Source: Amphiscolops sp. MND2022 (lineage: Eukaryota). Taken from it: a DNA stretch of 64,000 bases. The stretch is from contig OZ076410.1 of NCBI GenBank assembly GCA_964187785.1, positions 97,526,001 to 97,590,000 on the forward strand. Direction: 5' to 3'. The notes beneath the pieces are model-generated. The model saw only the letters and a program-made list of their open reading frames with translations. It had not been told where the DNA came from and did no database searches. This document shows positions 34,921-61,800 of the stretch, piece by piece; the first letter of the stretch is position 1, and each line of letters begins with the position of its first letter. The translations under genes and the position numbers were made by a program.

Positions 34921-35044
34921 TACATTAATTCACAGTTAAATGTTGCTCATATTGATTTAAAGCGGAAAACATTCCTTGACATAAGGGCTTTTATATTCAA
35001 TTTTAGCTTGTTCCGGGAGTGAATATTTTGGACTTTAACATCAA

Positions 35045-39699: not shown

Positions 39700-42430
39700 A
39701 ACATGGCGATGGCGCTGCGATCAGAAAGCAGCAATTCATCATCTTTAACATTGTCAACAACGGCAATGTCGCACCTCGTCGGGTTACCAGTGTACTGGCA
39801 TGAGGCCAACTCAACCCCTACTATGGACTGGGACAAGTGGCTGGAATCGTTTCAAGTGGCTGTCATGGCCAAGTTCTCCATTTCAATCACAGAGTTGACT
39901 CGTGAAGTGAATGAGCAGAATCCAAGAGCCAGAGCTTCATTAGGGGATATGGACGAAGACCTTGCCAACAAAAAAGTAGTCAGTGTGCTGTACCATATAT
40001 CCCTCTGGAACTTAAAGGTGAAGAAACTGATGCAGCTAGCTACGACTGCTTCCAAATAAAAAGAAACCGTACCCTTGATCGTCATAATTTGTTTTCAAGA
40101 TTGCAGCAACCCGGCGAGACACTTCAACAATTCTGGCATACGTTGAATAGTTCAGCAACCCTGTGCGATTTTGGAGAACAAACGAAAACCCTCGTGCTAG
40201 ACATGTTCATTTTACATATGAAAATAAAAACGTGCAGGAAAAACGTTGCACCGAACCCCGTGAGCCAGCAGAAAGGCCGTCGAATTCCTATCCAACTACA
40301 GGAGCAAGATGATAAAGAAGTTGAAGAATTGCTAAAAGATGGCCACATTGAAGAAATAGATAAGATTCAAGATGACGTATTTATTCAACCAACAGTAATA
40401 GCAGTCAAAAAGGACAAATTGGTGAAAATAGCGCTAGATGCACGCGCGCGAAATGAATCTATAGCAAAAGATAAATACCCAATGCCCAACCTAGATAATA
40501 TAATTGACATGATTGCGGACGAATTGGAAAAAAGTGAAGGGGAAGCTTGGTATTCGTTTGCAAATATGACCTATGCTTATGGACAAATTCCGCTACATGA
40601 ATTACCAAACATACATTGTAATTTTCAAATACTTGGAGAAAATCCACCATCGATTTACCACTGGGTATTATGGACTGACTGTAATGCGAACTGAGTTCCA
40701 AAAACGAATGGATTCGACGCTAGCCAATATAAATAGTGTATTTGCGTACATAGACAACTTTTTAATTGTAACCAAGGGAACCAAGCAAGAGCATGTAAAT
40801 AAAGTAAAAGAAGTTATGAGAGTGTTTGACGACGCCAAGTTGCAACTAAAGGCAGGAAAATGCATAATTGCTCAAGACAGCATAGAATGGCTAGGCTTCA
40901 AATTAACGCGAACAGGCCTCGCCCGGATTATCACAAGATCCCAGGGTATAAGTGAAAGATTGCGACCGACCAATTTAAAACAATTACGCTCTTTTCTGGG
41001 GCAGTCAATCAATTCAATAAATTTATACCTAATTTAGCTTCAATCAGTTCTCCTTTTTGATCTATTTTAAAGAATGATACAAAGTGGGAATAGAATAACA
41101 GTCATGAGAAAGCATTTGTCCAAATATATAAACAAATCAAGAACGTTGTAGATATATCAAATTTTAAAAGGAACCAAGAAATTATAATTATTTCTTATGT
41201 AAGTAAAAAAGGGCTAGGTGCAGTGTTGCAACAAAAACAAAATAATAATGAATGGAGACCAATTTGCTTTGCATCACGCTTGTTAACAGATTTCGAGGCA
41301 AAATACTCCATTAATGAACTGGAGTTACTAGCTATAGTATGGGCAGTCGTGCATTTTAAAATTTATGTATTAGGTGTAAAGTTTAAAGTAATCTCAGATC
41401 ACAAAGCGTTAATGTCAGTATTGAAACCAACTAGGGGACACAAGTTTTTTTCGAGCAGATTAACCAGATGGGTGGGTAGATTACTACCCTTTGAATTCGA
41501 AGTAATACATGTAGCCGGGAGAACATTAGGGATGGCACACTACTTATCCCGTCATCCAGCTGAATTACAAGGAGCATCGTTAAAAGCTGAAGCACTATGG
41601 AATGAAAGGTTTACTGTAAATAGTGTAATTAGTTTGAAAGATGTTTTAGATGACTGGACGCCAGCAAGCAGGCGCTTTAATGAAGCTATTCAATTTTTTT
41701 GCAATCCTTCAGATCTTTCATGTAACCGTTCCTTTTCAAGAAATTCATTAACATCTCATGCTATTGTGCCTTTTGTCAATTCTAGGATTTTTCCTCCTTA
41801 TTGATAGAAAAGAATGCTTCTCGCGGGAGCGAAATTAATACTAGGAGCGAAACTTTGAATTCTGGAAAACTCTGACGGTGAATGTAAAGATGTATTCAGA
41901 CAATGGAATAAAGGTTTGGCTAGTAATAATAGAAATTGGAATAAAAGGGAAAATTTATCCAAAGGAAAAAGAGAAAAAAATTGAAAATATTTCATTTAAA
42001 AAACTCGATACTGTTTCAGACGAAGCACCAAACTGAGCGATATAAATCCAAGTGAATTAATACTGTAGAAGTTTTCCTTTTTTTAAACCCACGCTCTAAT
42101 AGCGCTAAAAAAGTTGGAGCTGAAAGCGGTGAAAATAAAACGAAAGTCTTTGATTGGCTGATACTTTCTTCATGTGATGTCAGACGCAGTTGAGTCATTT
42201 ATTGCGGGATGGAGCGGCCACGTGAAATTAAATTCCATTTGACCGAAATGAAAAGTTCAATTTAAATTACTTAGACGAACGCGAATGATTTGCTTTCGTC
42301 GAATGAATTTTACTTACCAATTTTGGATGAAATCAGCTAACGAGTGTTGCTATCAAGCCGAATAGTAGAAAGTTGTGAATACGACACTACGAAATTTCCT
42401 TTCGTTGATGATTACCAAGCAAAGATTCGA
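39700..42430 (+). mobile_element. Internally deleted, decayed Ty3/Gypsy fragment
   Basis: gag-like (DWDKWLESFQVAVMAK) joined directly to RT (IPIQLQEQ, YPMPNLD, AYIDNF); RNase H (WRPICFASRLL, YSINELELLA). No LTRs identified. Confidence 0.85.
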
Positions 42431-42867: not shown

Positions 42868-43146
42868 TAAAAGGTCCCCCCTTTTGATTTTTTTGGCACT
42901 GTGCGACTTTTTTTCGAAAATTTTTTAATGTCTTAAAGGGTCCCCCCTTTGAGTTTTTTTGTTATTTTGCAACAGAATGCATGCTTATAAATCAAAAAAG
43001 GTCCCCCCTTTTACATTTTTTGGCAGTGTGCGACATTTTCCGAAGGACAAAAAATTCTCGAAAGACTCAAGTTTTTTTCCAAAGAAAATGTTTTGCGCTT
43101 TTTGAGCCTTAGATATAGCGCCGACTTTAGACGTTCTCGTCTTGTT
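42868..43146 (-). mobile_element. Family A copy 6 (5' half)
   Basis: Minus-strand start AACAAGACGAGAACGTCTAAAGTCGGCGCTATATC. Confidence 0.7.
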
Positions 43147-43514
43147 ACCCTTAGTTCTCCGTATGATATTGCTTATTTGGTTTTCTTATTTGGTTTTCTT
43201 TCGCCTCTGTGTACAAAACCTACTTTTTTAAACCTTGATCGAGGCTCCGTTTTAGGCTGTTCCATTTTTACACTACATCCGTAGTGGTTTGCGTTTTACT
43301 AAGGAGGAAGCGGCGATTTGAGAACAAAGCGCTATATCCGAATTACGACGTTTTATTCGAAGAATAATTGCGTCATACTAATTGGAAAGTAGAGGTTCTG
43401 AATTATTGCTCCATTTCCGAATTTGGACGTATGTATATGTATTTATTTTTCGTTTCTACTTGGGTTTAATGTTTAGTCATCATTTTTTCTAGATTTTTAC
43501 GTTGTGTTTCATTC

Positions 43515-44120
43515 ATGATGCCGAAGAAGCATCCAACTTTCTCACCCCTTCAAATGAGAGGTGTCATAAAGCTATCCAACGGAAAAATCATGCATTGGAA
43601 TTGTTTCCGGATTTCATATAAAGTCACGACTGCTCTCATCGGGGATTCAATAGTAAGAGATATTTGCATAAACGGGGTATGTGCATATTCGATTCCAGGA
43701 GGAACTATAGAGGATTTTAGGAGACCAGAGGTTTTACTTCAACTCTGCCCCTACCAAAATATTATCGTTGGCAGCATTGGTGGAAATGACTTGACCACAA
43801 GAGAAGGGATATGTTTAAGGAATCCCGTTGATGTTTTTAATGATTTCATGGATTTGGTCAATTTGTTGGCTCTGTTTGTTGACATTGTTATGACTGTTTC
43901 GCAACGTTTTGGTGGCCTGAGTCAGGTGACAGATTTCAATAGACTTTTGGAGCAGTCTTCTGCCCTGTCAACTTATAAAACGAGACGCAAAGTGCACAGG
44001 CTACAGTGCTGGGAAGCTGACAAAGTGCACCTCACTCTATCAGGAAGAAGGGATTTCTGCAAGGCGGAAGGAGATCTTAGAAATGTGTTCCACTTTTTGC
44101 CCCATAGTTGCCCGAACTGA
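43515..44120 (+). CDS. SGNH/GDSL hydrolase-like protein (201 aa)
   Basis: Block I LIGDSIVR, block II IPGGT, block III GGND, block V DKVHL; uninterrupted ORF. Confidence 0.75.
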   Translation: MMPKKHPTFSPLQMRGVIKLSNGKIMHWNCFRISYKVTTALIGDSIVRDICINGVCAYSIPGGTIEDFRRPEVLLQLCPYQNIIVGSIGGNDLTTREGICLRNPVDVFNDFMDLVNLLALFVDIVMTVSQRFGGLSQVTDFNRLLEQSSALSTYKTRRKVHRLQCWEADKVHLTLSGRRDFCKAEGDLRNVFHFLPHSCPN

Positions 44121-44746
44121 ATTGCCACGTGCAAGTAAAATGTTTACTTCTCTGAATAATTCGAACTTGTATCTTTTCATTTGTTGAGGCCTTGAGATAA
44201 TTTCATTTGGTATTCGTTTTGGCTTTCTTCGGGAAATGTTTTCCCAAAAGTTATAACTGTGCCCCATTCATTCACGTGCTATTAATTAATGTTGGTTTCT
44301 TTTTTTTCCTAGGATACAACTTCGGTGACTTATTTTGCCGGCGTGTCCAGTTTACCTCTCAAGTTTTCTATGGAAAGCCTCTTTTAGGCTATCTGCGAAA
44401 AGGGTGTCCAAAAGAGCTTGTCACTTGCCCCCATCAATGTATGTTGGACTGCTTTTTTAACTTTTAACCAATCTCATAATCTTTAGCTAAAGAACTGTTT
44501 GTTCATCTTGACGGATGATTATTTGAAATATATTCACTAGTTTGTTTGTCTTGCAATCAAGTTTTTGATGCAATTGTTTTGTCAAGATTTGGTTTCTTCT
44601 TATTTGGTCAAGAAACTGCCTCTTTGATTATTGAGCTTTGTTGGTAAACTTTTAGGTGAGGTTCTTTTTTAAGGGCCTATGCCCATGTGCTACAGTAGAG
44701 TATTCCATAGTTACCTGCAGCATTTTTCAGTTTGTTTGTCGAGATG

Positions 44747-45760
44747 ACTGAAAAAAGGAAAAGTCAAAAAACTAACGAAGACGACACCTTAAATGATTAT
44801 CTCACGTTCTTGAATAATAAAGCTGCGTCAATGCGTTGGCTGTTTTATTGCTCAGCAGACAAAAAGTGCTTCGTTCTAACTTATAACCACAGTGTGTGGA
44901 CCAGGCACTTCTCACTACAAGATAAAATCGATCTAAGCCCAAACGCTTTTATGGAGATGAGGTACAATGGTAGTAGCTATAAATGAAGCTTGGTGAAGTC
45001 AAGAACTGCTGCTGAAGTTCGCGCAGCTCAGCGGAAGACGTTTCAGCGTCTCAATGAAGTTGAGCATACCCTTCCTTTGATTGAGCTAGATAGAAGTATC
45101 CAAGAACCTGTGGAACAAGAAGTCATTAGTTCCACCCAAAACATTGTTTTTGATGATGCGTTGATGAATGATCAGTCTAAGGCGCGGTCTCCAGCACAAG
45201 GCAAAGGGAAGAAAAATTGTACAATTGACCAATCTCTTCTGCTAGGCTAAACGCGACAGACATCGCATGATCCGAACGAGTTCAACTCCCACAATTTCCT
45301 AAAGATGCAGGGGTCTTTTTTCGACAATTGGCTGGAACAACAGAAACAGATGACGATGGGCATCCTCAGTCACAACAAAAGTGTAAACAAGAGTTTAAAC
45401 AGGTTGATTTCCGTGTTAGAAAGATCTGGAAAAGGCGACCAGGAAGCTGAGGCAGAAGGGTCCGAAAACGTTGACCCAGAATTCCTAATAAACGGAGAGT
45501 TAACCTTCTGGCCTTGCCGTAGGAGAAAAATGCGTCCATGTTTGGGCCGCCTTATTTTCGGTGATAAGGAAGACTCAGAGTTGCTAAATACTATGATATC
45601 ACCTGGTAAAGACCAAGAAAGTACGAGATCGAGTTGTTGCGGAACGAAGAAGTCAATTTTTGCCAAAGTTGTGAAAAAAAATATCCCAAGAGTCCACAAG
45701 TTGCCTATGCAGCTGCGCGTGAAGCTGCCAACCAAATGGGAAGAGAGTTTTGTTTGAAAT
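44747..45760 (+). pseudogene. Accessory ORF paralogue 1 with BEN-domain-like C-terminus (disrupted)
   Basis: ORF pieces 44732-44986, 44990-45250 and 45305-45757; N-terminal ~110 aa near-identical to the ORF at 46559; C-terminal GRLIFG...TRSSC...VVKKNIP. Confidence 0.5.
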
Positions 45761-46558
45761 ATCCTTCTCGTGTCGCGGGACCTAGTGGAAGTAGTAGCGC
45801 AAACTGAATTTTTTTCTTGAGGAGAAAAATGCTGAATGGTTCGCTGTTAGCCTTTTTTAGGCTACGTTAGAAACACAGCTTTGCGAGAACTGAAATGTCA
45901 TATCAAATTGACTTCTTTATATCTTTGAAACATTTTTCGGAAAGCCTTTTTCAGGCTTTCTTCGGGAAAACGATTCCCAAAAGGTGGAATTGTGGCACCC
46001 TCCTATTTATCTGCCTCACTACTTTTCTCCTTCATTGAGTCCCAAATGGCCAATAAACTTATATGAAATTTCGTTGATGCCTTGAATTACCTTTCACGTG
46101 TTGATTTATATGTTGCATTCTTTCTCTCCTAGGATACCATCTCCGATGACTTTTTTTGCCGCCGTTCTTTACTTCTCAAAATTTCTATGGAAAGCCTCAT
46201 TTAGGCTGCCCGCGGAAAAAGAGTTCCAAAAAAGCTTGTCTCTTGCTCCCACCAATGTATGTTGGACTGCTTCTTTTACACCATTCTCATAATCTCCTTC
46301 ACATTATGAACTGCTTGTTTATTATGCTGTTTTATATTTCGAAAAATATTTCACTGCTTTTTGATGCACTTTGTTTTTCATGTTTTGGTTACTTCAGAAT
46401 CTCTCAAGAAAATGCTTCATTGATTGTTGAGCTTTGTTGTTAACATTTCATCATAGGTTTTTTGTCTTTTATTTCAAGTCCTAAGCCCATATGCTACATT
46501 AAAGTCTTCAATAGAAAACTGCAGCCTTTTTCAGTGCATTTGATGATTAACTGTCGAG

Positions 46559-47950
46559 ATGACTGGAAAAAGGAAAAGTCAAAAAACTCACGAAGACGAC
46601 ACCTTCAATGAACATCTCACATTCTTGAATAATAAAGCTGCGTCAATGCGTTGGCTGTTTTATTACTCAGCAGATAAAAAGTGCTTCGTTCTTACTTATA
46701 ACCACAGCGTAAGGCCAAGGCACTTCTCACTGCAAGATAAAATCAATCTAAGCCCAAACGACTTTGTGAAGATGAGCTACAACGGTAGTAGCTTGATGAA
46801 GTTAGGAACTGCTGCTGAAGTTCGCGAAGCTCAGCGGAAGACGTATCAACGTCTCAATGATGCTGATAAAACCCTTCCTTTTGTTGAGCTAGATAAAAAT
46901 ATCCAAGCACCTGTGGCACAAGAAGTCATCAGTTCCACCCAAAACGCTGTTTTTGACGATGTGTTGTTAGATGATGTGTTGATGGATGAACAGTCTCAGG
47001 CGCGGTGTCAAGCACATGGGAAAGGGAAGAAAAAACAACATGTCGCCGGATCTTCTTTCCTTGCTTTCGGTTCATTGCCGCAAAGTACATTAGAACCAAC
47101 GTTGTTTTCTCAAAACAATGGAATCAGTGATTTGTTACTGAGTGAACTCCCGAAAGAAGACGAAGTTTTTCCTCCGAACAATCACATCACGGGTAAAAGT
47201 TTTGAGCCGGTCAGGGGTGCTTCGTTCACTTCTGGCTCCACGCCATTCGCCAGCCATGGTAAGTAATCTTTCATTTTCAGCTCTCACAATTACTTTAGAC
47301 TGGCAAAGCCAAAAATATGGGTTATCCTATGTTCAGAATTTTGTTGATTGTGACTTTTTCCTATGCCACTGACTACTTCCAAAACGATTTCCTATTCTTC
47401 GGTAACTGATTTTTTGTTTTCCGACTTTCAGATCGCTCTGCATCTCTCAGCTCTGACCCTTGCCAGCTATTAGAGCTACAACATTCAATTTTCTCAAGAT
47501 ATCTCGAACAGCAGCGAGAATTCACAACTGGCCTTATGGTTCAAAACAAAAGCCTAACGCGGAATCTCAAACTTGTGCTGTCAGTTTTGGAGTCTGCTAA
47601 CTTTGAAGAAGAGGTTAATGAGGTAGCACTGGAAGTTGAATGTGCTGGTCCCAATTTCTTCTTTAATGGTGTAAATCTTCTGTAACTTCCGACGAGCAGT
47701 CAGACTACAACGTTTGGCAGGACATTGGGTCGTGCAATTTCCACAAAAGATAAGGGGAAAAAGGCGAATTGTGACTTGATTGACACAATGATATCACCCG
47801 GTAAAACCCAGGATAATACCAGGTCAAAGTGTTTCGAGAAAAAAAACAATGTTCGCTAAGGTTGTGAAAAGAAAGTTCCCCAAAAGCCCCAAAATTGTTT
47901 AGGCCAACCAAATGGGTTGAGAATTTCGTATGAAACATCCTTCTCGTGTC
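46559..47950 (+). pseudogene. Accessory ORF paralogue 2 (spliced) with BEN-domain-like C-terminus (disrupted)
   Basis: ORF 46559-47266; phase-1 donor CATG|GTAAGT (~47258) and acceptor TTTCAG (~47430) give an in-frame exon homologous to 45305-45757. TFGRTLGRAI...DLIDTMISPGK...VKRKFP...ANQMG-EFRMK fits BEN spacing. Confidence 0.5.
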
Positions 47951-50470
47951 GCGGGAACTAGTGGAAGTAGCGACTCAAAGTGAATACAATTTTTCTCGAA
48001 GAGAAATATGCTGATTGAATCGCTCTGTGAGTCTCTTTTAGGCTACGTTCAGAAGGTCCACTTCCGAGAACTGAAGAGCTTTATCGGATTGGCTTGTTTA
48101 TATCTCTAAAACGTTCTTTGGAAATTTTGCTTCAGGCTATCTTCGAGAAAAAAATCCCAAAAATTGCAAATGTGCCCCTCTTATGTATCTGCCTCACAAG
48201 TTTTGTCCTTCATAGAGTGCCAAAAAGCAAATAGACTTCTTTATGAATCTTTATGCCTTGATTTACCATTCACGTGCAATTAATTTATTTTGCTTTCTTT
48301 TTTTCCTAGGATACCACCTCGATGACTTACTTTGCCGCCGTATCCAGTTGACATGTTTTCCTCTCAAATTTTCTATGGAAAGCCTCTCTTAGGCTATCCG
48401 CGGAAAAAGGTGTCCAAAAGAGCTTGTCACTTGCCCCCATCAATGTATGTTGGACTGCTTTGTTAACCAATCTGATAATCTTTAGCTAATGAACTGTTTG
48501 TTCATCTTGACATTTGATTATTTGAAAGAGAATTGACTAGTTTGTTTGTCTTGCAATCAAATTATCAATGCAATTGTTTTGTCAAGTTTTGGTTTCTTCT
48601 CAGTCGGTCAAGAAACTGCTTTTTTGATTATTGAGCTTTGTTGGTAATTGTTTAGGTGAGGTTCTTTGTTTTTTTATCGGATTTTTGTTCATTTTAGACT
48701 GACATTTGTCCGTTATCTGCAGTTCCTTTCATTTAGCCTAAACTTTACAGTTTACGGAGAGTACTGAAAATATACCGTTTTCAATTTTGTTGAGTGAAAA
48801 GGCGACTCTGTCTCTTTCCGACATAACAGTTCTAACACTGAAATCTTTTTTTGTTTCAATTTAGAGTGCCTAATTTTCTATGGAAAGCCACCTTTAGGCT
48901 ATCCGCGCAAAAGAACTCCACGAGAGTTGGTCTGGTGCCCCCCCCCAGTTATTAACTTGCTTGACTGCTACGCTAGTCATTAATAGAGTCTCCATTAGCC
49001 AATGATTTTTCGTTGATTTATCTTATTCCTTTTTGTCTTGATTTAAAACTTTTTAAGTCTTTGGCGAATCATTCTTTCTCTGACTTTCCTTATACATCAT
49101 TGAAAGAGCTACACTGCAATGTTCAAGTGTATTCAAGTGACATGCTTACCACTCTGAAGATATCTTTGGAGAGCCTCCTTTAGGCTATCCGCGGAAAAAG
49201 GTGTCCAAAAAAGCTTGTCCCTTGCCCCCATCAATGTATGTTGGACTGCCTTCTAACTTTAGCATGTGTAATCTCATAATCTTTAGCTCATGAACTGTTT
49301 GTTCATCTGAACATTTGATACCTTGAAATATAATTCACTAGTTTGTTTGTCTTGCAATCAAATTTTTGATGCAATTGTTTTCTCAAGTTTTTGTTTCTTC
49401 TCAGTTCGTCAAGAAACTGCCTCTTTGATTATTGAGCTTTGTTGGTAATTGTTTAGGTGAGGTTCTTTGTTTTTTATCGGATTTTTGTTCATATTAGACT
49501 GAGATTTGTCCGTTATCTGCAGTTCCTTTCATTTAGCCTAAACTTTACAGTTTACGGAGAGTACTGAAAGTATACCGTTTTCAATTTTGTTGAGTGAAAA
49601 GGCGACTCTGTCTCTTTCCGACACAACAGTTCTAACACTGAAATCTTTATTTGTTTCAATTTAGAGTGCCTAATTTTCTATGGAAAGCCTCCTTTAGGCT
49701 ATCCGCGCAAAAGAACTCCACGAGAGTTGGTCTGGTGCCCCCCCAGTTAATAACTTGCTTGACTGCTACGCTAGTCATTAATAGAGTCTCCATTAGCCAA
49801 TGATTTTTCGCTGATTTATCTTATTCCTTTTTGTCTTGAGTTAAAACTTTTTAAGTCTTTGGCGAATCATTCTTTCTCTTACTTTCCTTATACATCATTG
49901 AAAGAGCTACACTGCAATGTTCAAGTGTATTCAAGTGACATGCTTACCACTCTGAAACTATCTTTGGAGAGCCTCCTTTAGGCTATCCGCGGAAAAAGGT
50001 GTCCAAAAACGCTTGTCCCTTGCCCCCATCAATGTATGTTGGACTGCCTTCTAACTTTAGCATGTGTAATCTCATAATCTTTAGCTAATGAACTGTTTGT
50101 TCATCTGAACATTTGATACCTTGAAATATAATTCACTAGTTTGTTTGTCTTGCAATCAAATTTTTGATGCAATTGTTTTCTCAAGTTTTTGTTTCTTCTC
50201 AGTTCGTCAAGAAACTGCCTCTTTGATAATTGAGCTTTGTTGGAAAATGTTCAGGTGAGGTTTTTTGTTTTTTTCCGGATGTTTGTTCAGTTTAGACTGA
50301 CATTTGTCCATTATCTGCAGTTCCCTTCTTTTAGTTTTAACTTTACAGTTTACGGAAAGTACTGAAAATATCCCGCTTTTAATTTTGTTAAGTGAAAAGG
50401 CGACTCTGTCTCTCCCCGACACCACAGTTCTAACACTGAAATCTTTATTAGTTTCAATTTAGATTGCCTA

Positions 50471-51125
50471 ATGGAAACCTACGCCTATGTTTACCGAATT
50501 CTTGGCGAATGTGACGGACATTTGTTCCGCAAAAGGTATGAACTCAGAAGTCGACCTCATCTAACGTTTTTCCAACTAGCCAGCGAATCTGTTTTTGATG
50601 AACTTTTGACAAGAAAAAAAGTTTTTATTGCTGAACAAAACATTGCACGCGGCTTATGAAGCAGCTGCGATTAGTGGCATGCAGTTCAGAGAAGCTTCTT
50701 ACAATGGATATGGCTGCTTTAACTCAACTGGTCGGACAATGGATAAAAAGCATCAGCCTAGTCTTCTTGGGCTCTTAACCAAAATTCCAGAAAGCGAATT
50801 TGAATCTTGCCAATTGTCCGTATTTGACGACACTCCAAGATGTAAGTACAATCAAATTATGGTTGGACAGGCTAGGTTTGTCAATCATTCCTGTGAGAAC
50901 AACGCGATCTTTGTGCCCAGTTACTTTCAGAACAAAAAGTCTGTGAGAATTCAACTTGTCAAATCTGTTGGTCCAGGGGAAGAAATTCTTGTTTGGTATG
51001 GTAGCGATTACTTCGGAGAGCACAACAATGAATGTAAGTGCAAAGCTTCCTTTCACGAAAAGAGATTTGAGTTGTTGTCGTCTGCAAAAACAACTCGAAA
51101 TATTTCATCACATTCCCAAGAATAA
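50471..51125 (+). CDS. SET-domain protein, Suv4-20/KMT5B-like (one-base frameshift in the A7 run at 50614-50620)
   Basis: ISGMQF...LLGLLTKI...LSVFDDTPR...IMVGQARFVNHSC...GPGEEILVWYGSDYFGEHNNECKC parallels Suv4-20 (SGF...LVGCIAEL...FSVMYSTRK...LWLGPAAFINHDC...[24 protein letters not shown]). Removing one A joins 50471-50659 to 50628-51125. Confidence 0.85.
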
Positions 51126-51305
51126 CAATAAAGCGAAATCGGGTTCAGTTACCTCGCCTACTTCAAAAGAGAAGACGTGTGGTTCCAAGTTACGTTGAGC
51201 CTGACACACCATCTTCTAGTCCTGACGAATTGGATGTTGAACAGAACGAGATGAACTCTCTACCTGAGATGACGCTCGGCATGCCATCGACGAGCACACC
51301 CTTAC

Positions 51306-53449
51306 ATGAATTATCTTTCCCGAACTTTTCTTCTTCGAATATTGTCACTGGAAACAAAAACAAAGGACCACGTCTTGTTGGGAAATGAGCTTTCATCTTT
51401 CCCAACGATGACACCGACGATGTCTTCATCTTATTTTAGTGATAGTTCTTCGGCTCCAAATAGTGATAGCCTTTCCGATGGTGATAATCGGAATCCTCTT
51501 TACCCTGGCTCCCTTATCAGTGTCGAAAACTTCTTGTTGACCATAGAAGCTATAGCTGTGTCTTATTGTCTTTCAGACAAAGCGATGCGAGACCTTTTGA
51601 AATTTCTTCAAATCATCCTACCATCTGGTAACAAATGCCCAAGTGAGAGAACTTTGAAACGTTCCCAACGATCTGCGTTGCCGTATAGAAGTGAAAAATG
51701 TGGATCTAGTACACTGGCTTTCCTATCACCTGCCTCTGAACTAGAAGCTGTGATCAAGAGTAATTATGAATCAATCCGCAAATATGACAGTGACAGAATC
51801 GATTGCCTCGACTTGAAACTGCCATTTTCCACTGGCATTATTTCCAATGATGAGTTCATTGCACATCTTATTTTGAATGTTGACGGCGTTTCGTTGGTTA
51901 AATCTTCGAATCGAAGCTTGTGGCCGGTTTGGTTATCATTAGCCAATCTCCCAACCATTCTCCGGTCTGCTTTCAGGAATATAGTTCTAGCTAGTTTGTG
52001 GTTGACTTTTGGAAAACCAAGTTGGGAAATTGTCATATCTTTGTTGGAGAGAGAGTTTCAAGAAGCTCGGTTCATTCATCTCATTGGAAAAGTTGTGCGC
52101 TTGAAATTCCAAATTATATTAATGATGGCTGATCTTCCTGTAAAAGCTTCCATTTTGTGTCATAAGCAATTTAATGGGCAGTATGGGTGTTCACTGTGTT
52201 ACTGTCCCGGCAAGGTGATCAAATGCGTCATTAAATCTGGTAAAAGCTCGCACATTCGCATGTACGAGGCTGACAGTGAAATTCGAATGCGAACTGGGGA
52301 ATTCCATTTACAGCATCTATCTGACTTGTCTCACATAAATAGAAAGCCTCTCATTGCGAATTTTAGTGTTCTCGGTCGAAGCCATTTGGATAGGTTGTTA
52401 CCCAGTTTCCCCTTAACATGGCCAATCGACTACATGCATCAGGTTCTAGTAGGGGTGATGAGAAGCTTTCTGAATGTGGCGTTGACAAATTAACTACCCG
52501 GAGCAAAGAAATAATTGATCTTTTTCACAAGTCCTTAAAAGCTCCGAGTGTAATACGGCGAACCCCCAGACCACTTTTTGAGCTCAAACATTACAAAGCT
52601 TTCGAGCTCGAAACTTGGCTTCTCTATATTGGTCCTGTAGTTTTTCAGCTGCTAGAAAGTGGAATTTACTCTGCTTTTATGAAGTTGTCTTCGGCTGTTC
52701 GAAGTTTGCTTTCAGGCTGCTCCGAGCTCGACACCTGTGAATCTCTTCTAAATGAATCCTGTCTGTTCATGGCTAACATAGATAAGAAACCAAAAACATA
52801 TAAGTTGCACTCTTTGCAACACCTAGCCTGGCAGGTTAAAAACTTTGGTCCTCTGTGGACTACTTCCGCTACAGCATTTGAACCAGCGCACCACATTTTA
52901 GCTGTTAAATTCACAGGCTGTGTTAATCATTTGGAATTCCTGGTGGAAAGATATTCGAGATGTAAACGGTTATTTCGAACCGAGTTTAAATATCCTCTTT
53001 TGGGCGCTTTCTTCGAACGAACTTTGAGCACTGAGTCCAAAATTGACCGCATGATTTCGATGCAGCTTATGAAACAATTCAAAGAACGCGGTTTCAAGTT
53101 GAAGGCGAGAACAAAGGTCGAGCGACTCGTCAACGAATCCGAAAGTTACGAGTTATATCAGAGTGCAAGTTATGTCGAGTTTCAATTTGAACGCAAAGTT
53201 TCCATTGGACGGGTTCTTTTTTTCTACGAGAAAAATGGCAGGGATCGTTGTCTCATTGAAAAGTTGGAATGCGTAGAACTTGCAATCCCCGGAAACTGTA
53301 GTGACATGAACGCTTTTGTTTTCGTTTTTGTGAAAACTGGTGCGATACGCGATCTTGATTTATCATGCTTGAAGGGCTTGTTTTTGCGTATGAGTTTTCA
53401 GGACAAAATCTACTTTGTGCGACTGTTACTTCATTTCCATCATAACTGA
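51306..53449 (+). pseudogene. EnSpm/CACTA (CMC superfamily) DDE transposase, one frameshift near 52480
   Basis: PLYPGS N-terminal motif; LNVDGVSL (D1); SLWPV...NLP; ADLPVKA (D2); QFNGQYGCSLC; IDYMHQVLVG; LWTTSATAFE (E). Confidence 0.9.
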
Positions 53450-53910
53450 ATATATTGAAAACATTTGTCTTTTTCAAAGTTGTTGCATTCGGAAGAGGAC
53501 CTCTTCAGGTCGCCTCCCCAGATAACTGGCATGTATCGATCATTATTGATTCTTCATTTGTTCTTATCTTGCACAATCGACATTTGTAATCATTGAAAAA
53601 AATGTGCTCGACTGTTGTTTTCCTCTTTAAGAGAATTTTGTTCTAAGTTTGTTTATTCTGCCCCATAAAATTTTGTGCAGGGGAGTTATTTTATCGAAAG
53701 TGAAGCGTTTTTTTTCAAAGTCTGCAAAATCCGACATTTTTGAACATGATCTCTATTCCAGGTAATTTTGTTCCGGGCATGACCAATAGTCGTGAAAATA
53801 AAAGATGTGGAACCTTCATACAATCCACATCTAATCGCTGTTTCTGTTCTATCCCAACAGTGTTGGTTTTTGATCCCATCCTAAGTCATGTAGATCTCAT
53901 TGGCAGTGTT

Positions 53911-54510
53911 TATAGTCGGCGCTTTTCTATTAAGGGAAAAATGCCCGTCTAGAGCACTGACAGTTTTTTTTCTTCAGACAACAATCCTCACACTGATTGG
54001 TCCACTTTTCTTACAATTCTTACGATCTTAAAATCTTACAAATCTTACTTAGCAAATTTAAAATACTGGAACAAAAGCTTGCGAAGTAGTGTTTATACAT
54101 CATCTAAGAAACTCAAAGGGACCAAAGGGTACTCCCTTAGTGTATTTTCGGCTCTTTGAGACTTTTTTTCCAAAAAAGAAATACCCAGAAGGGTCCGCCC
54201 TTCAATTTTTTGGAGTTTTCCGACAGAACGGATGTTGAAAAATCCCAGAGGGTCCCCCTTCAGTTTTTTCGGCATCGTGAGACTTTTTTTCAAAATTTTT
54301 TTTCCACCAAAAGTGCCTCTCCTTCACTTTTTTTGATGATTTGCGCCAGAATGGATGAAAAATCTCAAAGCGTCTCTTCTGGTGCGCCAATTCGGTTCAA
54401 CTTTTGGGTTTTTTCCGGTACCGTAGAAGAGAATACTTTGACACTTTGAAGTCCTTTTGCTGTTTTTGACCCTTTGATATGGCGCCGACTTGGGCCGTTC
54501 CCTGCTTGTT
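53911..54510 (-). mobile_element. Family A copy 7
   Basis: TAGTCGGCGC at 53913 and GGCGCCGACTTGGGCCGTTCCCTGCTTGTT ending at 54510. Confidence 0.75.
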
Positions 54511-55856: not shown

Positions 55857-58800
55857 TGTAAAGGCTGATTCTAGTAGCAAATGCGTTCGAACCGTCGGCC
55901 TGTCCCTGGAATAAATTTAACTTGCAAAAAATTGAAAAGTTCCCGAAAACTTTACGAATCCGTGATGAAAACTGAATATTTCAACTTCTAAAACAGCCAC
56001 AACTTAATTTCGAGAAGTCAATTTTCCGTTCTAATATGGTTATACAACATCTCAGGTACATCGAATAATAGTGGAAACAATATAGAAGCAAATATTTATG
56101 CGTAAATAGGAAGTTATGAGAGTATATCCGCTGATTTACAACAAGTAACTACACTTTCGTGATCAGTAAATACACTATCTTGGGCACTTTCTGCCTATCT
56201 AAGTAGGCTAATATTGGCTACAAATACTCAAATATGTTCGCACAACACGATCACAAACAAATATGAGGGCTAAAGTGAGTTAAACAGGAAATGGAGGGCA
56301 ATATTTGCCAAAAAAGTGATATATTGATCGAAAAGTCCAAAAACCCCCCAGAAAAAAATAAAAAATTAAAAAATCGAAATAATTTCCAGTTTTTTGTCCT
56401 AGATCGGTAGTTTGGGTCAAAATATTAGGGTTGTCACTAATCCGGGCGTCAATTTCTTATTCGATGTTGAAATGTGGCTCGTTGAATGTACCAAATTTTG
56501 GGTTATTTTCGGTTGTCAACTTTCAGGCTTTTTCATCGCCGGCCCTGTGTTTCACTTGGGGAGGAACACACTCAGTGTCGTCCATTACACGGGACAACTT
56601 GACTGTAGGTCGAGAAACAACCCCAGATTGGGTGAGGATGTCACAAGATCGAATATAGCCATCATTCCCAAAATGGCACTTTTTGACTCTACCAAGGCGG
56701 TAAAAACCTCGTTTTTCACGATGATCGATAATCCACACCAGGTCGTTTTCTTTCAATTGTGGACGTTCCTTGTACCATTTCTGGCGGATATTATGCACTG
56801 GGAGATACTCTTTCAGCCATCTTGCCCAAATGTTGTCCATGTGAGCCTGCGCAACTCGGAACATCTTTCTGTGATTTTGGTACATATGGAATAGCAATAC
56901 TAATAGAAAATGATGAGGCGTTAAAACCTCCATGTCGGAAGAATCATTAGAGTTAGGCGTGAGAGAGCGAGAATTTAGCAGTTGGTCACTGAGACAAAGA
57001 ATTGTAGCTAAGAGCTCGTCAGTAAGCCTCTGACCATTCAGAACGTGGTAAATGGCTTTTTTGCATGTCTTCACCATTCGCTCCCACGAACCTCCGAAAT
57101 GTGGCGCTGCAGCCGGGTTGAATTTCCAAACGATTTTCTTTTGGCGAAGTTTTTCTTGGAAATCGTCATTTTGCCACATTGATGCAAACTGCTTCAGCTT
57201 GTACCATTATGGCTCCAGATTGTTGATGGGTGACCTCTTCTGGCAATGAATAGTGAAACAGCACTCCGACAGGAGTCAGTATCTAGCGAATACACCATTT
57301 CGAGGTGTATGGCCCTTGTCGACAGGCAGGTAAAGACACACACCCATCTCTTTGAGGTTTTTCTCATGTATTTTACCTCTATGGGCCCAAAATAATCGAC
57401 TCCAACATAAGTAAAAGGAAAATCTATTTTCTCAACTCTTTCTCTTGGTAGGTCAGCCGCCATGATTGGAGCTTGGACAACGGCACTGTATTTCCTGTAT
57501 GGAAAGCAGCGATTTTTGATGTTCCGCAAGGCGTTTCTGAGGCCCAATATCCAGAATTTCTGTTGCAATCCATGTCGCATACTCTCAACGCCTTAATGAT
57601 AATTGTCCAAATGACATTTCAGCATCATCAGTCGCGTTGCAGGATGCTTGGATGGTAGAAGGATTGGGTGTTTAGTATCGAATTCGAAATCAGCTTTTGA
57701 TAAACGCCCACGTCCTCTCATAATACCCTGATTGTCGATAAACAGGCAAAGTTGTGCAACGTTTGATTTATGGGAAAACTCTTTTCCATTGACTAGGTTA
57801 TCACATTCAGTGGTAAAAGATTCCTTTTGAACCAATTTGAATATGATTTGCTCTGTATTGTGATATTCATCCAATGAAATCAATCCTCTTACTCGTTTGG
57901 AATTTCTCCAGCGTAGTATGTAACAAATAGTATGAATTAATTGAGTCCAAGAACTAGATCGTTCCCATTGTATCTCAAGTGGCTTGTTTGGTAATATAGT
58001 TACTACTTGAGATGTTTCTGAAAAGTCCTCAACAATAGTGCACGCAGCAGTAGCTTTTGGCCAGTGAGCTTCGTTCTCAACCAGCCACGCCGGCCCGTTT
58101 AGCCACACACTCGACGAAATTTCATTGGCTCTCATCCCTCGCGTACCAAGATCTTCTGGATTTTGTGCGCCAGGGACATGATTCCATTCACGCAGCTTGG
58201 TGTTTTCCAAAATTTTCCCAATACGATTCGCAACAAAAATTTGTTGCTTCTTTTCAAATGCATTCAACCATTGTTGATGAATCACTGTTGATGAATGGAT
58301 ACTTTTGTCCGTGAAGCATGAAGGGCTGCTTGAAGCTCCAATTTCGGAATTGTAGTAGTTTTGATAGGAGCCACTCTTGTTTTCCCAATTACGAAAAAAA
58401 CTTTGACCTCGTCATCAATCTCAAACCTCAAGTAGGGAACGACACAAAGTCCCATTTCTGATGCATCGGCAAACACATGTAATTGTACATTACTGCCACG
58501 CTGCCAGCCATAATGTCTGTTTATTGAGAGTTCCTTCAGAACTGGAATTTCTTGTGACCAATCAAGATATTGTTTTGCAACATTGCGGAATTTCTTCATC
58601 CCAAGATTTCAAAGCCTTCTGCCAAATAAGTTGTAAAATAGGACAAATTCTGATTGTGAAGGGTGAAGCCAGTCCCAATGGATCAAATATGGAGGATGCC
58701 ACGGACAGAACCACTCTGTGAGTGATTATGGTAAGCTCTTTGCCTGCAAAACCACGGCATAGTTTGAGATCATCCGAGATGAGGTTCCATTCCAATCCCA

Positions 58801-61800
58801 AAGCCATAACACTCTCCACGTCACTGTCTTTCTCGCACAATTCTTTCACGTTTGATTGCCATTTAGAAAGCTTGAAACCGCCTTTCTGCAAGAGAGATAT
58901 CAGGTTTTGTTTCAAAGATTTTGCATCCTGGATATTTTCCGCAGAATACAGGAAGTCGTCCATATAGAAATTTCGCTTCACAATTCTTGCAGCAACTTGG
59001 AATTCTTCCTCATTGTCTGTGGCTGTACGTTGTAAAACATAAATTGCACATGTTGGCGAGTCTTTGGCGCCAAGTATATGTCGGGTGTATTCATACGTGG
59101 ATATTTCTCCTGATTGATTTTCTCGCCAAACGAAACGAATGCATTTTGCATCTTCTGGAGGGACTTGTACCTGCAAGAACATTGCTTCAATGTCTACGCT
59201 CATGCCAAACGGCTTCTCCCGGAACCGGAATATTATCCCCACAAGATTCTGCAGTAAATTCGGACCAATGAAGAGACTTTTGTTCGAGGATTGTCCCTCG
59301 AATTCGCTCGCTGCATTGCAGACGCGCGTAAATTTTCCAGGTTTGTTTGGGTTAATTACTGGGTGATGGGGTAAATACCACTGATGATCATTTCTAGTGT
59401 TTTGAAGCTCAGCTGGTTCAAGTATCCGAATATAACCCGAATCGTGGTCCGTCTTGATTGTATCAGAGTACGAAGCTTTGAGTTCTGGGTTTTTGGCCAG
59501 TCGGTTTTCGAGTGACAAGAACTGCTTAACAGCACTTCGATAATTGTTTGGCAGACTGGAACGAGGAGAATTCCACAACATTCCCACGGTGTACCTGTCA
59601 TTTTCACAGCGCGTTGTCTTTTCCAAAGTTTCGAGTGCTTTAACATCTGATCTGGATCGCCCATCCGCTTTCACTCGTGAACCATAGTTTTCATTGTCCC
59701 ACCATGTCTTGATTTGCTCGTTCAAGTCGAAGTCGGCAGATTGATAAACCGAACTATGACATGATGTCAGTGACGACACAATCTTTTTTGGCAATGGTCC
59801 ACTGACTGCCCACCCCAAAGAACATCGAACTGCCCAGGGCTCACCTGGCTGTCCACGTTCATATTCTAAGGGTCGAGTCAATGAGAAGCAATCCGTTCCA
59901 AGGATAACTTTAACATCTTTCAGTTTGAAATTGTTTGAAGGAACTTTGGCCAGTTGAGGGTACTGACTCTGCATTTTTCGAATATCGTAAAAACTCTCAC
60001 CAATAACAAGTTTTTGATGAATAGCCATCTGGATATCTTCGTTTCCGTAATCCTTCGAATGAATGGTGACATTGAAAATCTCACTGTCGTGGCATTCAGT
60101 ACCATTTATTCCGCTGACAGTTAGACCGCGCTTGATTCCCTGCAGATTGAGTTGATCTGCTGACGTTTTATCAATCTATGACAGACTAGACCCACTATCA
60201 ACTAACGCCAGGAGTTTCACCCTGTTCCCATTGTTTGAGAGCTCCACTTTGTACACAGGTAGAATGCCAAAAGTGTTCAAACTTACGCTTGCATGAGTCT
60301 CCACAATCTCCGTTGACGTCGTATTAGAGATTTTGGGCTCTTCCGGTCGGTGCAGTAATCTGTTGTGATGTCTTTTGCAACCGTCGATTCCACATTCTTT
60401 CATCTTGCAATCCTTCACAGCATGCCCCCCTCGGAAACATAGGAAGCACAATTTATTTTCCTTCACCTTTTTGTATCGGTCGATAGGGGTCAGTTTCTTG
60501 AAGGCATCACAAGCCCATAATCCATGGGTATTGCTGCAGACAACACATTTGATTGGACCTTTTGGATTAGAATTAAAAGTAGACAACCCAGTCTCGTTGG
60601 CGGTCGCGGACATGGATGATCCTGTTGTTTTTGTTCGGTCAGCCGACGTGGACTGCTTCTTGTCGTTGCTTTGCCTGAATTGAACGAGCAGTTCATCATA
60701 AACGAATGCAATGTCGTTCAACCACTCACTAAATTTACTGAAGTTTGCAGTTTGGTATTTTTGTCCTTTCGCATAGAACATCCATTTTGTTTTCAGCTCT
60801 GGAGGTAGTTTTCTTACAGCGCTGTTCAATACAGACTCTGAGCTGAGATCGCCAGTAAAGCCGTATTGATTCAAAACACTAACACACGTCGTTATGAGTT
60901 GGGAGTATTTGATAATAGCTGCTGAGTCGTGAGATTTGATGAAAGGATACGTGTGGATAAGTTTCATTTGAGCATTAACCACTGTCTGGGGTCGACCAAA
61001 GTTGCGGACCAACGTGTCCCAGGCAGTGTGATATAAAGCTCCAGAGTAACCAAGGCCTGCGATTGCAGCTTTGGCTTTGCCTTTCACCAACGTTTTCAAA
61101 TGGCTCAATTTCGCGTTGTCGTCGATTGGCGCATTGTGAATTACTGCATTAAATAGATTGGACCTTTCGGGCCACTCCAAAGGATCACCTGCAAATTCGG
61201 TCATCTTCAGTTTTGGTAGACTGGATGTTTGGACCGTCCATTGGGGCAGGATAGGTTGTTGGAAAGGCAATGAATTGAGGCGTGAGATCCTGTTGGGCAG
61301 TTCGCAGTTTGCATTGAGATGTCGTTCTGGTGAGAATGTTCTTGATTTCGAACGACTTTGGCTTCTATCACCTCGGCCACTTACCCTTCTGTCTTTGCGG
61401 TTGGTAGAAGGATCCTTTCGCGCAATTACTTTCGGTGGTTGTCCTCTACAAATTCCTGAAGCCACTGGATCGCTTGAGATAACAGTGTTACCCCCTGCAG
61501 TTTTCACAGCCATCTGCGAATTTTGCTTTTGAATATCCACAACGTGGCTGTTTTGATCTAACCAGCTTTTGATGTCACTGTTTTTAACAGCATCGATTGA
61601 TAACGACATCAGACTGGGACTAACAGTTGACCCATTACAAGAGCCTTCTGCTTCCTCGATTTGAAGTTTCATTTCCTGCATCTTCAGGGAGGTCTGATCC
61701 CGTAACTCAGTCAACTCGGTTTCAGCTTGCACGTCTTCGAGTTTCAATTCCATCTCCATTTCCAGCTGTCGCTGCTTGCGTTTCAGCTCTAATTCTCTTT

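What the first reader, a model, noticed from the sequence alone, without database searches (positions are those of the whole stretch)
50471..53449. Suv4-20-like histone methyltransferase domain encoded directly upstream of, and possibly fused to, a CACTA/EnSpm transposase
Seen: a SET ORF with RFVNHSC, GEEILVWYG and post-SET cysteines lies 180 bp upstream of a CMC transposase, on the same strand and in the same reading frame. A third-frame ORF (open ~51069-51388; basic LQKRRR then an S/T/P/D-rich linker) overlaps both the SET end and the transposase start, so two compensating one-base indels near A-runs would give one SET-linker-transposase protein. Known: Suv4-20/KMT5B writes H4K20me2/3 and uses a Ser in FSV where other SET enzymes have Tyr; this copy has LSVF. 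SETMAR, the familiar SET-transposase chimera, combines a different SET type with a mariner transposase. Inference: a mobile DNA element carries its own chromatin writer, which could mark its insertions or excision breaks or alter host silencing. The last post-SET Zn ligand looks altered (CKCKASFH versus CECYTC).
Basis: partly seen in the sequence, partly recalled or inferred. Interest (0 to 1): 0.9.

Follow-up and report, generated by a model that had tools for sequence, protein, structure and literature searches.

The report
Transposase fused to histone-methyltransferase domain
This stretch is a dead, frameshifted copy of an animal jumping gene whose cutting enzyme is built as one protein with a histone H4K20-methyltransferase-like domain; I found this design intact in many other genomes but described in no paper I could search.

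Summary
At 50471-53449 (+) five overlapping ORFs encode, in order, an N-terminal helix region, a SET domain, a basic/acidic linker and a DDE transposase split in two.

The SET part is specifically Suv4-20/KMT5-like. A family profile hits KMT5C at 6.6e-26, against 1e-10 for the next SET type. In fold searches, 12 of the top 13 solved structures are SUV420H1/H2.

The transposase is CMC, nearest the Mirage group (Pfam DUF1258), with a RAG1-like fold. D, D, CxxC, HxxxH and E are all present.

The fusion is real:
- Natural uninterrupted ORFs of 982-1116 aa with the same order exist in other assemblies.
- 14 of the 150 best SET relatives carry both parts.
- Diverged sister copies in this genome's reads carry 1-bp indels at exactly the four frame breaks (about 50613, 51112-51115, 51363, 52486).

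The window copy is therefore a pseudogene of a roughly 995-aa SET-linker-transposase. It appears to sit in a ~10-12 kb multi-gene element whose gene order is conserved in a distant relative.

What the SET domain does is inferred, not shown. The first-stage scan flagged at least six other copies in this genome. I found no publication describing this fusion.

The parts
50471..50613 (+). True N-terminus of the fusion protein (frame 2): helical region ahead of the SET core, with the ILGECDGH motif at 50498-50521
   Evidence: 52% identical to residues 5-52 of the relative P0001. It aligns with the N-termini of all full-length fusions.
50613..50620 (+). Frame break 1 (frame 2 to 0) in an A7 run
   Evidence: A sister-copy contig in run X2 lacks one base here. 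tblastn with P0001 switches frame here.
50610..51125 (+). Suv4-20/KMT5-like SET module (frame 0): GYG 50703-20, LSV 50811-25, NHSC 50874-94, WYG 50979-51002, post-SET CKC...H 51006-56; stop at 51123-25
51112..51115 (+). Frame break 2 (frame 0 to 2), 8-11 bp before the SET stop codon
   Evidence: Sister-copy contigs in all four runs carry one extra base here. A window-identical contig is also present.
51071..51388 (+). Linker in frame 2: basic patch LQKRRR (51161-78), then an S/T/P/D/E-rich stretch
   Evidence: Open frame. Intact relatives have the same pattern, a basic patch then an acidic Ser-rich stretch. The equivalent region is disordered in the model of P0021, residues 210-336, pLDDT about 25.
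51363..51363 (+). Frame break 3 (frame 2 to 0) in an A-rich run
   Evidence: A sister-copy contig in run X4 lacks one base here.
51306..52493 (+). Transposase, N-terminal and catalytic first half (frame 0): first D in LILNVDG 51867-87, second D in MMADLPVKA 52122-48, C(2)C GCSLC 52185-99, PIDYMHQ 52422-42
   Evidence: Pfam DUF1258 at 1.4e-10. Colinear with residues about 330-690 of P0010, P0016 and P0021. Motifs.
52486..52486 (+). Frame break 4 (frame 0 to 2)
   Evidence: Sister-copy contigs in all four runs carry an extra G here. The tblastn frame switch falls between 52475 and 52484-52514.
52418..53449 (+). Transposase C-terminal half (frame 2): H(3)H HSLQH 52808-22, catalytic E in FEPAHH 52877-94, C-terminal beta-rich domain, conserved end LLHFHHN
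   Evidence: Aligns with residues about 650-995 of the full-length fusions. RAG1-like fold in the model of P0021.
48340..50472 (+). About 800-bp unit repeated 2.7 times, ending exactly at the ATG (50471). Probably a promoter/5'UTR module; a shorter version precedes the upstream genes.
43473..47893 (+). Upstream accessory genes: an SGNH/GDSL-hydrolase-like gene at 43473-44090 and two paralogous genes of unknown family at 44750-45792 and 46568-47893
   Evidence: Homologous and colinear with the ORFs upstream of the SET-transposase in L002 (tblastx). SGNH is an Atlas lead at 0.94. No Pfam hits.
53825..54500 (.). Very high-copy repeat that bounds the low-copy block on the right
   Evidence: Contig word depth jumps from about 50-300 to 5e4-2e6. 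Related copies lie elsewhere in the window.

Best explanation
The window holds a pseudogenised copy of a cut-and-paste DNA transposon of the CMC superfamily (Mirage-like, RAG1-fold DDE enzyme). Its transposase is natively one polypeptide of about 995 aa:
- an N-terminal Suv4-20/KMT5-type SET methyltransferase module;
- a disordered linker of about 120 aa with a basic, NLS-like patch;
- the transposase.

This copy has four 1-bp frameshifts but keeps every catalytic motif of both enzymes, which suggests it has decayed little since it was disabled. Less damaged sister copies exist in the same genome.

The fusion gene travels with an SGNH-hydrolase-like gene and one or two further genes in a ~10-12 kb unit.

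Inferred mechanism, not shown: the SET module is an active lysine methyltransferase tethered to the transposase by the flexible linker. It would act on nucleosomes next to the transposition complex, writing H4K20me2/3 at the donor or target site. The most likely benefit is either steering 53BP1-type end-joining repair and compaction of the breaks the transposase makes, or docking the complex on heterochromatic, satellite chromatin as a safe haven.
For: Shown:
- Domain identities.
- Colinear alignment of the window's five ORFs with uninterrupted natural fusion ORFs P0010 (1034 aa), P0016 (982 aa) and P0021 (995 aa).
- 14 of the 150 best 50%-identity representatives found with the SET ORF carry SET plus transposase in one ORF.
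- All 14 lie on one side of a 100/99-supported split, away from the other Suv4-20-like SETs.
- The P0166 cluster has 19 members at 90% identity or more, several of them intact at 1115-1116 aa on different large contigs. Ka/Ks between two copies is 0.28 overall and 0.13-0.18 in the transposase.
- Sister-copy contigs in this genome's reads are about 2-8% diverged and lie at about 1.5-2.5 times the depth of window-identical contigs. They carry -1, +1, -1 and +1 bp exactly at the four breaks.
- The SET motifs (GxG, Ser of FSV, NHxC, Tyr, CxC..H) are invariant or nearly so across lineages under 50% identical.
- The DDE, C(2)C and H(3)H motifs are kept in the window copy.
- The model of P0021 shows a confident SET module, a disordered linker and a confident RAG1-like body.
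- Gene order upstream is conserved with L002.
- In L002 a roughly 12-kb block interrupts a 171-bp satellite whose phase resumes after it.

Inferred: catalytic activity, from motif conservation; substrate, from the specific likeness to KMT5B/C.
Against: - No enzymatic, expression or transposition data exist, and no run labelled as RNA was found.
- The four indels in sister copies come from short contigs (about 200 nt) and are not phased, so an intact copy in this genome is not proven.
- Termini and target-site duplications were not established in the window. The candidate ends (CACTAC at 43271, GCAGTG at 53908) have non-matching flanks.
- Ka/Ks for the SET part alone is only 0.41, from 18 substitutions.
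- The last post-SET zinc ligand is His rather than Cys in most members, and two members lack the His of NHxC, so catalysis could be altered.
- From general knowledge, H4K20me2 is abundant genome-wide in many animals, which weakens the repair idea.
- The association with satellites is anecdotal (three contexts).
Confidence: 0.85

Rival explanations
1. Two separate genes: a cargo SET gene followed by an ordinary transposase gene in the same element, each with its own start and stop as in the window copy. The long ORFs elsewhere would be secondary read-through fusions.
For: - In the window the SET ORF ends with a stop and the next ORF starts with ATG 180 bp later.
- Many database relatives are short SET-only ORFs.
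- L002 and L003 also have breaks.
Against: - The breaks in the window are frameshifts at positions where sister copies differ by exactly 1 bp.
- The true linker frame is the third frame, and it carries the family's basic-then-acidic pattern.
- 14 diverged lineages have both parts in one ORF, several of them about 1000 aa and multi-copy.
- Short SET-only ORFs interleave with fusion ORFs in the tree, as expected of fragments.
Confidence: 0.06
2. A domesticated host gene family (as SETMAR is): the SET-transposase protein is no longer mobile and serves a host chromatin or repair function. The window copy would be a decayed paralogue.
For: - Purifying selection on the ORF.
- The catalytic motifs of both domains are conserved.
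- No clear TIRs or TSDs were found around the window copy, L001 or L003.
- L006 to L009 share more than 23 kb, which could be segmental duplication.
Against: - Many copies per genome, with frameshifted and truncated members (scan notes).
- Patchy, deep diversification into more than 14 lineages under 50% identical.
- The ~12-kb block in L002 interrupts a satellite in phase.
- The neighbours are other mobile elements and repeats rather than conserved host genes.
Confidence: 0.07
3. A fused, mobile element, but the SET module is a non-catalytic nucleosome or H4-tail binding domain, or it methylates a non-histone substrate such as the transposase itself or a repair factor.
For: - The post-SET zinc site is Cys3-His rather than Cys4 in most members.
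- Some members have NSxC in place of NHxC.
- Ka/Ks for the SET part is a modest 0.41.
- From general knowledge, SETMAR's SET domain also has debated substrates.
Against: - Family-wide conservation of the SAM-pocket and lysine-channel motifs shared with KMT5B/C: GxG, Ser, N of NHxC, Tyr, and FFGE-N-CxC.
- Fold match over the whole KMT5 catalytic unit.
Confidence: 0.3
4. Chance adjacency of a host KMT5 gene fragment and an unrelated transposon insertion.
For: The region is a mosaic of mobile elements.
Against: - The same order and spacing recurs in many unrelated assemblies and within single ORFs.
- These SET domains form their own group, apart from the other Suv4-20-like SETs.
- The upstream gene order is conserved too.
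Confidence: 0.01

Closest known systems
SETMAR / Metnase (primate SET + Hsmar1 mariner transposase)
   Same: One polypeptide with an N-terminal SET lysine methyltransferase and a C-terminal DDE/DDD transposase. It is linked in the literature to DSB repair (PMC2847698, seen).
   Different: SETMAR is a single-copy host gene created when a mariner element landed beside a pre-existing host SET gene. Its SET is of another type (E=0.16 against 3e-11 for KMT5C) and its transposase is Tc1/mariner. Here the fusion is the transposon's own transposase. It is multi-copy, old and diversified, with a Suv4-20-type SET and a RAG1-fold CMC transposase.
KMT5B/KMT5C (Suv4-20h1/h2) and fungal Set9, the H4K20me2/3 writers
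   Same: Best sequence, profile and fold match, including the N-terminal helical domain. It shares the Ser in the FSV position, NHxC, the FFGE-N-CxC motif and a post-SET zinc site.
   Different: The transposon SETs fall on the other side of a 100/99 split from the remaining Suv4-20-like SETs. Their N-terminal region scores only with the transposon profile. The fourth zinc ligand is His, 2-5 residues after CxC, instead of Cys. Substrate and activity are untested.
CMC superfamily transposases: Mirage (Pfam DUF1258), CACTA/EnSpm (Transposase_21), Chapaev; structurally RAG1/Transib
   Same: DUF1258 above the Pfam cut-off and weak Transposase_21 and Plavaka hits. DDE with C(2)C and H(3)H between the second D and E, the hallmark cited in PMC12730594. 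RAG1 core is the best solved fold (TM by target 0.5-0.63 over about 600 columns). DUF1258 corresponds to the Mirage group according to PMC3985635.
   Different: No described CMC family that I could find has a SET domain in the transposase. Termini and TSD were not verified here.
DNA transposons that carry chromatin or DNA-modification genes: HarbingerS and MuDR of Phytophthora with a SET gene; fungal KDZ, EnSpm, Plavaka and Helitron elements with TET/JBP
   Same: A mobile element carrying its own epigenetic enzyme (Kojima 2025, PMC12730594, which cites Repbase Reports 2014 for the SET cases).
   Different: In those elements the enzyme is, as described, a separate gene, in oomycetes or fungi and in other superfamilies. 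Here it is a domain of the transposase itself, Suv4-20-type, in animals.
Giant RAG1-like transposons with SET + JmjC + Tudor-like genes noted by this scan in the same genome
   Same: Same genome; a RAG1-fold transposase travelling with a histone methyltransferase (scan notes).
   Different: Those are described as ~18-20 kb elements with separate writer, eraser and reader genes and a BRCT-tailed transposase. I did not examine them.

Membership tests
Suv4-20 / KMT5 SET methyltransferases | Closer in sequence to KMT5B/C than to any other SET subfamily | tested here: met
   Single sequence: 3e-11 against 1.7e-3 or worse. Family profile: 6.6e-26 (KMT5C) and about 3e-23 (KMT5B), against 9e-11 for NSD1 and ASH1L.
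Suv4-20 / KMT5 SET methyltransferases | Fold of N-terminal helical domain plus SET plus post-SET | tested here: met
   Model at pLDDT 87. 12 of the top 13 PDB hits are SUV420H1/H2, 163-237 columns, TM 0.56-0.69, against 0.41-0.45 for MLL. Atlas best hit is KMT5C at TM 0.77. In the full-length model, TM by target is 0.61-0.65 over 224-234 columns.
Suv4-20 / KMT5 SET methyltransferases | Ser at the 'FSV' position; NHxC and Tyr catalytic/SAM motifs | tested here: met
   The Ser is invariant, N and C of NHxC are invariant, and Tyr is at least 90% conserved in 18 family members. The window has LSV, NHSC and WYG. Two members have NSxC.
Suv4-20 / KMT5 SET methyltransferases | Post-SET Cys4 zinc cluster (C...CxCxxC) | tested here: not met
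   Most aligned family members have CxC-x(2-5)-H instead of CxCxxC. A Cys3-His site is plausible, but metal binding was not tested.
Suv4-20 / KMT5 SET methyltransferases | Orthology with host KMT5 genes | tested here: not met
   All SET+transposase proteins fall in a 52-row group separated by a 100/99 branch from the other 69 Suv4-20-like hits. The tree is unrooted and the canonical KMT5 rows were not individually verified.
Suv4-20 / KMT5 SET methyltransferases | H4K20me1 to me2/3 activity on nucleosomes | not testable with these tools
   Needs biochemistry.
CMC (CACTA-Mirage-Chapaev) DDE transposases | Match to a family profile above the curated threshold | tested here: met
   DUF1258 (Mirage group) at 41.5 bits, above 33.1, in the window, and 51.2 bits in P0144. 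Transposase_21 stays below its cut-off.
CMC (CACTA-Mirage-Chapaev) DDE transposases | DDE triad with C(2)C and H(3-4)H between the second D and E | tested here: met
   LNxDG, ADLPxKA, GCSLC, HSLxH and FES/FEP are conserved in the family and in the window copy.
CMC (CACTA-Mirage-Chapaev) DDE transposases | 5'-CA(C)...(G)TG-3' termini, TIRs and 2-3 bp target-site duplication | tested here: inconclusive
   - No convincing TIR pair in the window.
- The candidate ends CACTAC (43271) and GCAGTG (53908) have flanks TTA and TTT.
- L002 has 240-400 bp TIR-like repeats, but the right one lies beyond a satellite fragment.
SETMAR-type chimera | SETMAR-type SET domain fused to a Tc1/mariner transposase, as a single-copy host gene | tested here: not met
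   SETMAR SET scores E=0.16. The transposase is DUF1258 with a RAG1 fold. The element is multi-copy with decayed copies.

The most novel reading that the evidence does not exclude
A widespread, old family of animal RAG1-fold transposases carries a catalytically active H4K20 methyltransferase as part of the transposase. Chromatin writing would then be a step of the transposition reaction itself. The enzyme would mark donor or target nucleosomes with H4K20me2/3, either to steer 53BP1-type repair of its own breaks or to find or create heterochromatic safe havens. Database annotation currently mislabels such proteins as host 'KMT5B-like' genes.
Probability: 0.3. Interest if true: 0.9.

Novelty: new variant of a known kind. 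Interest (0 to 1): 0.75.

Why it matters
Transposons are usually seen as targets of histone methylation. Here the transposase itself carries a writer of a mark tied to heterochromatin and to 53BP1-dependent break repair.

- It would be a natural, recurrent counterpart of SETMAR that arose inside a mobile element rather than by host capture.
- It sits in the same structural family as RAG1, whose own recombination is coupled to chromatin reading.
- Natural intact ORFs of about 1000 aa exist, so the question 'does a transposase edit chromatin to transpose?' becomes directly testable.
- On the practical side, these proteins inflate 'KMT5B-like' gene counts in automatic annotation.

Tried and rejected
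- TIR and TSD search around the window copy with three methods: only weak 15-31 nt matches. The CACTAC/GCAGTG pair proposed in another scan note has non-matching flanks.
- Test of a simple insertion of a 3-kb single-ORF element into the 800-bp repeat: rejected. The rest of the unit does not reappear after the ORF.
- Profile search of the word-indexed protein collection with A1: only 3 hits and no copies from this genome.
- L001 and L005 turned out to be the same locus from two assemblies, so they gave no boundaries.
- L006 to L009 share more than 23 kb, so the 10-kb flanks did not reach an end.
- Pfam on the upstream ORFs: nothing. The 'BEN-like' label is not supported (Atlas 0.43). SGNH is only an Atlas lead.
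- RNA run search: the same four runs of unknown type, and no run labelled as RNA.
- Literature: eight full-text searches found no description of a SET-CMC fusion. Repbase Reports are not searchable here.
- The organisms behind the relatives' assemblies could not be identified.
The frame arithmetic was done on coordinates only.
Full report
**What is in the sequence**

On the + strand between 50471 and 53449 there are five overlapping ORFs in two alternating frames:
- 50471-50659, frame 2
- 50628-51125, frame 0
- 51071/51179-51388, frame 2
- 51306-52493, frame 0
- 52418-53449, frame 2

Pfam finds a SET domain in the second (E=1.3e-9). In the fourth it finds DUF1258 (E=1.4e-10, 41.5 bits, above the 33.1-bit cut-off), with weak Transposase_21 and Plavaka hits. 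There is no other copy of either part in the window.

**The SET part is Suv4-20-like**

- The single ORF hits only KMT5C/KMT5B strongly among solved structures (3e-11 to 1e-9). The next SET types are at 1.7e-3 or worse, and SETMAR is at 0.16.
- A profile of 18 family members (alignment A2) gives KMT5C 6.6e-26 and KMT5B about 3e-23, against about 1e-10 for NSD1 and ASH1L.
- An AlphaFold model of the closest relative's SET module (P0001, pLDDT 87) has SUV420H1/H2 as 12 of its top 13 PDB matches, over 163-237 columns. That span includes the N-terminal helical domain. TM is 0.56-0.69, against 0.41-0.45 for MLL-type SETs.
- The ESM Atlas best match is KMT5C at TM 0.77.
- AlphaFold DB returns KMT5B/C, fungal Set9, and N-terminal-SET proteins of 375-952 aa automatically named 'KMT5B-like'.
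- In A2 the Ser of the FSV position, the N and C of NHxC, a GxG glycine and the first post-SET Cys are invariant. The catalytic-region Tyr and the second post-SET Cys are at least 90% conserved.
- The 'altered' last zinc ligand is a trait of most aligned members, CxC-x(2-5)-H. It is not decay of this copy.

**The transposase**

- The family alignment shows D (LNxDG), D (ADLPxKA), C(2)C (GCSLC), H(3)H (HSLxH) and E (FES/FEP). This is the CMC/Transib hallmark described in PMC12730594. All are intact in the window copy.
- A model of the full-length relative P0021 (995 aa, mean pLDDT 76) has a confident SET module (residues 20-210), a disordered linker (210-336, pLDDT about 25) and a confident body of about 650 aa.
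- The best solved matches of that body are RAG1 cores (E about 1e-12, about 600 columns, TM by target 0.5-0.63) and amphioxus RAG-like protein.

**The fusion is real**

- An exhaustive HMMER search with the 165-aa SET ORF found 1114 relatives.
- Among the best 150 representatives at 50% identity, 14 carry the transposase in the same ORF. They include uninterrupted ORFs of 1034, 982, 995 and 1035 aa.
- A further cluster, P0166, has 19 members at 90% identity or more, with several intact 1115-1116-aa ORFs on different large contigs.
- The full-length proteins align colinearly with the window:
  - SET residues about 40-230 to 50616-51104 (frame 0);
  - transposase residues about 330-690 to 51456-52475 (frame 0);
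  - transposase residues about 650-995 to 52484-53446 (frame 2);
  - the N-terminus of P0001 to 50480-50623 (frame 2).
- In a maximum-likelihood tree of 121 SET modules, all 14 fusion proteins lie in a 52-row group, separated by a 100/99 branch from the other 69 Suv4-20-like hits. That second group contains no fusion protein. The tree is unrooted.
- Short SET-only ORFs interleave with the fusions, as fragments would.
- Two copies of the P0166 family give Ka/Ks of 0.28 overall. By region: SET 0.41 (only 18 substitutions), linker 0.71, transposase 0.13-0.18.

**This genome's own reads**

Logan contigs of four runs of one sample were laid on 50300-54500. They include two kinds of contig:
- contigs identical to the window, so the frameshifts are real and not assembly errors;
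- diverged contigs (3-17 differences per about 170-230 nt) at about 1.5-2.5 times the depth, which are sister copies.

The sister copies differ by one base at exactly the four frame breaks:
- -1 at 50613, in the A7 run;
- +1 at 51112-51115, 8-11 bp before the SET stop;
- -1 at 51363;
- +1 (a G) at 52486.

Each change links the frame that is open upstream to the frame that is open downstream. I checked this on coordinates against the three-frame translation.

There is also an in-frame +9 at 53047, and a -2 at 51795 carried by a minority of the depth. The contigs are about 200 nt and unphased, so an intact copy in this genome is likely but not proven.

First-stage notes of this scan list at least six other stretches of this genome with the same SET-transposase arrangement, some called 'in frame'. 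These are unverified leads.

**Surroundings**

- The low-copy block runs from about 43.15-43.27 kb to about 53.9 kb. It lies between members of very high-copy repeats.
- Upstream of the fusion gene are an SGNH/GDSL-hydrolase-like ORF (Atlas lead 0.94; no Pfam hit) and two paralogous genes of unknown family (the 'BEN-like' label is not supported).
- These genes are homologous to, and colinear with, the ORFs upstream of the SET-transposase in L002. L002 is a contig from another organism, and its proteins are 45-56% identical to the window's.
- In L002 the whole ~12-kb block (about 2163-14203) interrupts a 171-bp satellite whose phase resumes right after it. TIR-like repeats of 240-400 bp lie near both sides. 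This fits a multi-gene unit that inserted as a whole.
- In the window a ~300-400 bp module is repeated in front of each gene. An 800-bp version is repeated 2.7 times and ends exactly at the ATG at 50471. It is probably a shared promoter/5'UTR.
- I could not fix the window element's termini.

**How it probably works**

Shown: the architecture, the conservation of both catalytic centres, multi-copy status, and purifying selection on the ORF.

Inferred: the SET module is an active Suv4-20-type methyltransferase held on a flexible ~120-aa tether, and it acts on nucleosomes beside the transpososome.
- I favour local H4K20me2/3 writing that aids repair and compaction of transposase-made breaks, by analogy with SETMAR and with the 53BP1-H4K20me2 link (general knowledge).
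- A closely competing idea is nucleosome docking that directs insertion to heterochromatin or satellites. All three contexts I examined lie in or beside tandem arrays, but that is anecdotal.
- A non-catalytic or non-histone role cannot be excluded.

**Novelty**

Known:
- SET genes as separate cargo in HarbingerS and MuDR of Phytophthora, and TET/JBP genes in fungal transposons (PMC12730594);
- SETMAR as a host-made SET-mariner chimera (PMC2847698).

Eight full-text searches found no description of a Suv4-20-type SET domain built into a CMC/RAG1-fold transposase. Repbase Reports could not be searched.

I class it as a new variant of a known kind. The window copy itself is a dead copy, and the interest lies in the family.

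Noticed in passing
window 48340-50472, and 44269-44670, 46174-46472: A ~300-400 bp module precedes each gene of the block. An 800-bp version is repeated in tandem 2.7 times and ends exactly at the ATG of the fusion ORF. The two extra units are followed only by a 5-codon ORF, so they look like promoter-only duplicates. L002 has analogous repeated modules in front of its genes (3759-3960, 5206-5410, 7283-7484).
   Followed up: partly
window 43271-43286: The palindrome CACTAC-ATCC-GTAGTG sits at the proposed left end of the block. It looks like two CACTA-type termini abutted, but it may be chance.
   Followed up: no
window 53825-54500 (also 43091-43183, 1845-2021, 32295-32567, 34761-35306, 36646-36925): A repeat family with contig word depth of 5e4-2e6 in the reads flanks the block on both sides and recurs in the window. 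Many internal deletion joints of about 95-186 bp suggest a satellite or a MITE-like array.
   Followed up: partly
window 56523-61759 (-) and 41223-41804 (+): A BEL/Pao retrotransposon (DUF5641, RVT_1, Peptidase_A17, DUF1759) lies downstream on the minus strand. A Gypsy-type RNase H fragment lies upstream.
   Followed up: no
window 43515-44120 (+): A 201-aa ORF resembles SGNH/GDSL hydrolases by protein-language-model features (0.94, 160-168 shared features). It has no Pfam hit. It is 47-51% identical to an ORF in the same relative position in L002.
   Followed up: partly
L002 7467-12195 and 12459-12810: The closest relative carries a 99.7%-identical 2.36-kb tandem duplication covering the SET and the start of the transposase. 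It also has an insert of about 350 bp inside the transposase.
   Followed up: partly
L006-L009 (ERZ25071366, ERZ25878734): Copies of the 1116-aa fusion gene sit in blocks that stay 88-99% identical over the whole 23 kb fetched, with tandem arrays at 3.8-5.4 kb and 15.8-22 kb. Either the element is very large or these are segmental duplications.
   Followed up: partly
AlphaFold DB hits A0A6G0XUJ9, A0A2S2NMP6, J9KIW7: Proteins of 660-952 aa with the SET module at residues about 6-206 are automatically named KMT5B-like or SUV420H2. They probably belong to this transposon family and are misannotated as host genes.
   Followed up: no
tree, rows P0108, P0083, P0020, P0026, P0051: Some SET modules from the transposon-side group sit internally in proteins with no detectable CMC transposase. 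One (P0051) has a weak, sub-threshold C2H2 zinc-finger hit. These may be other fusions or domesticated derivatives.
   Followed up: partly
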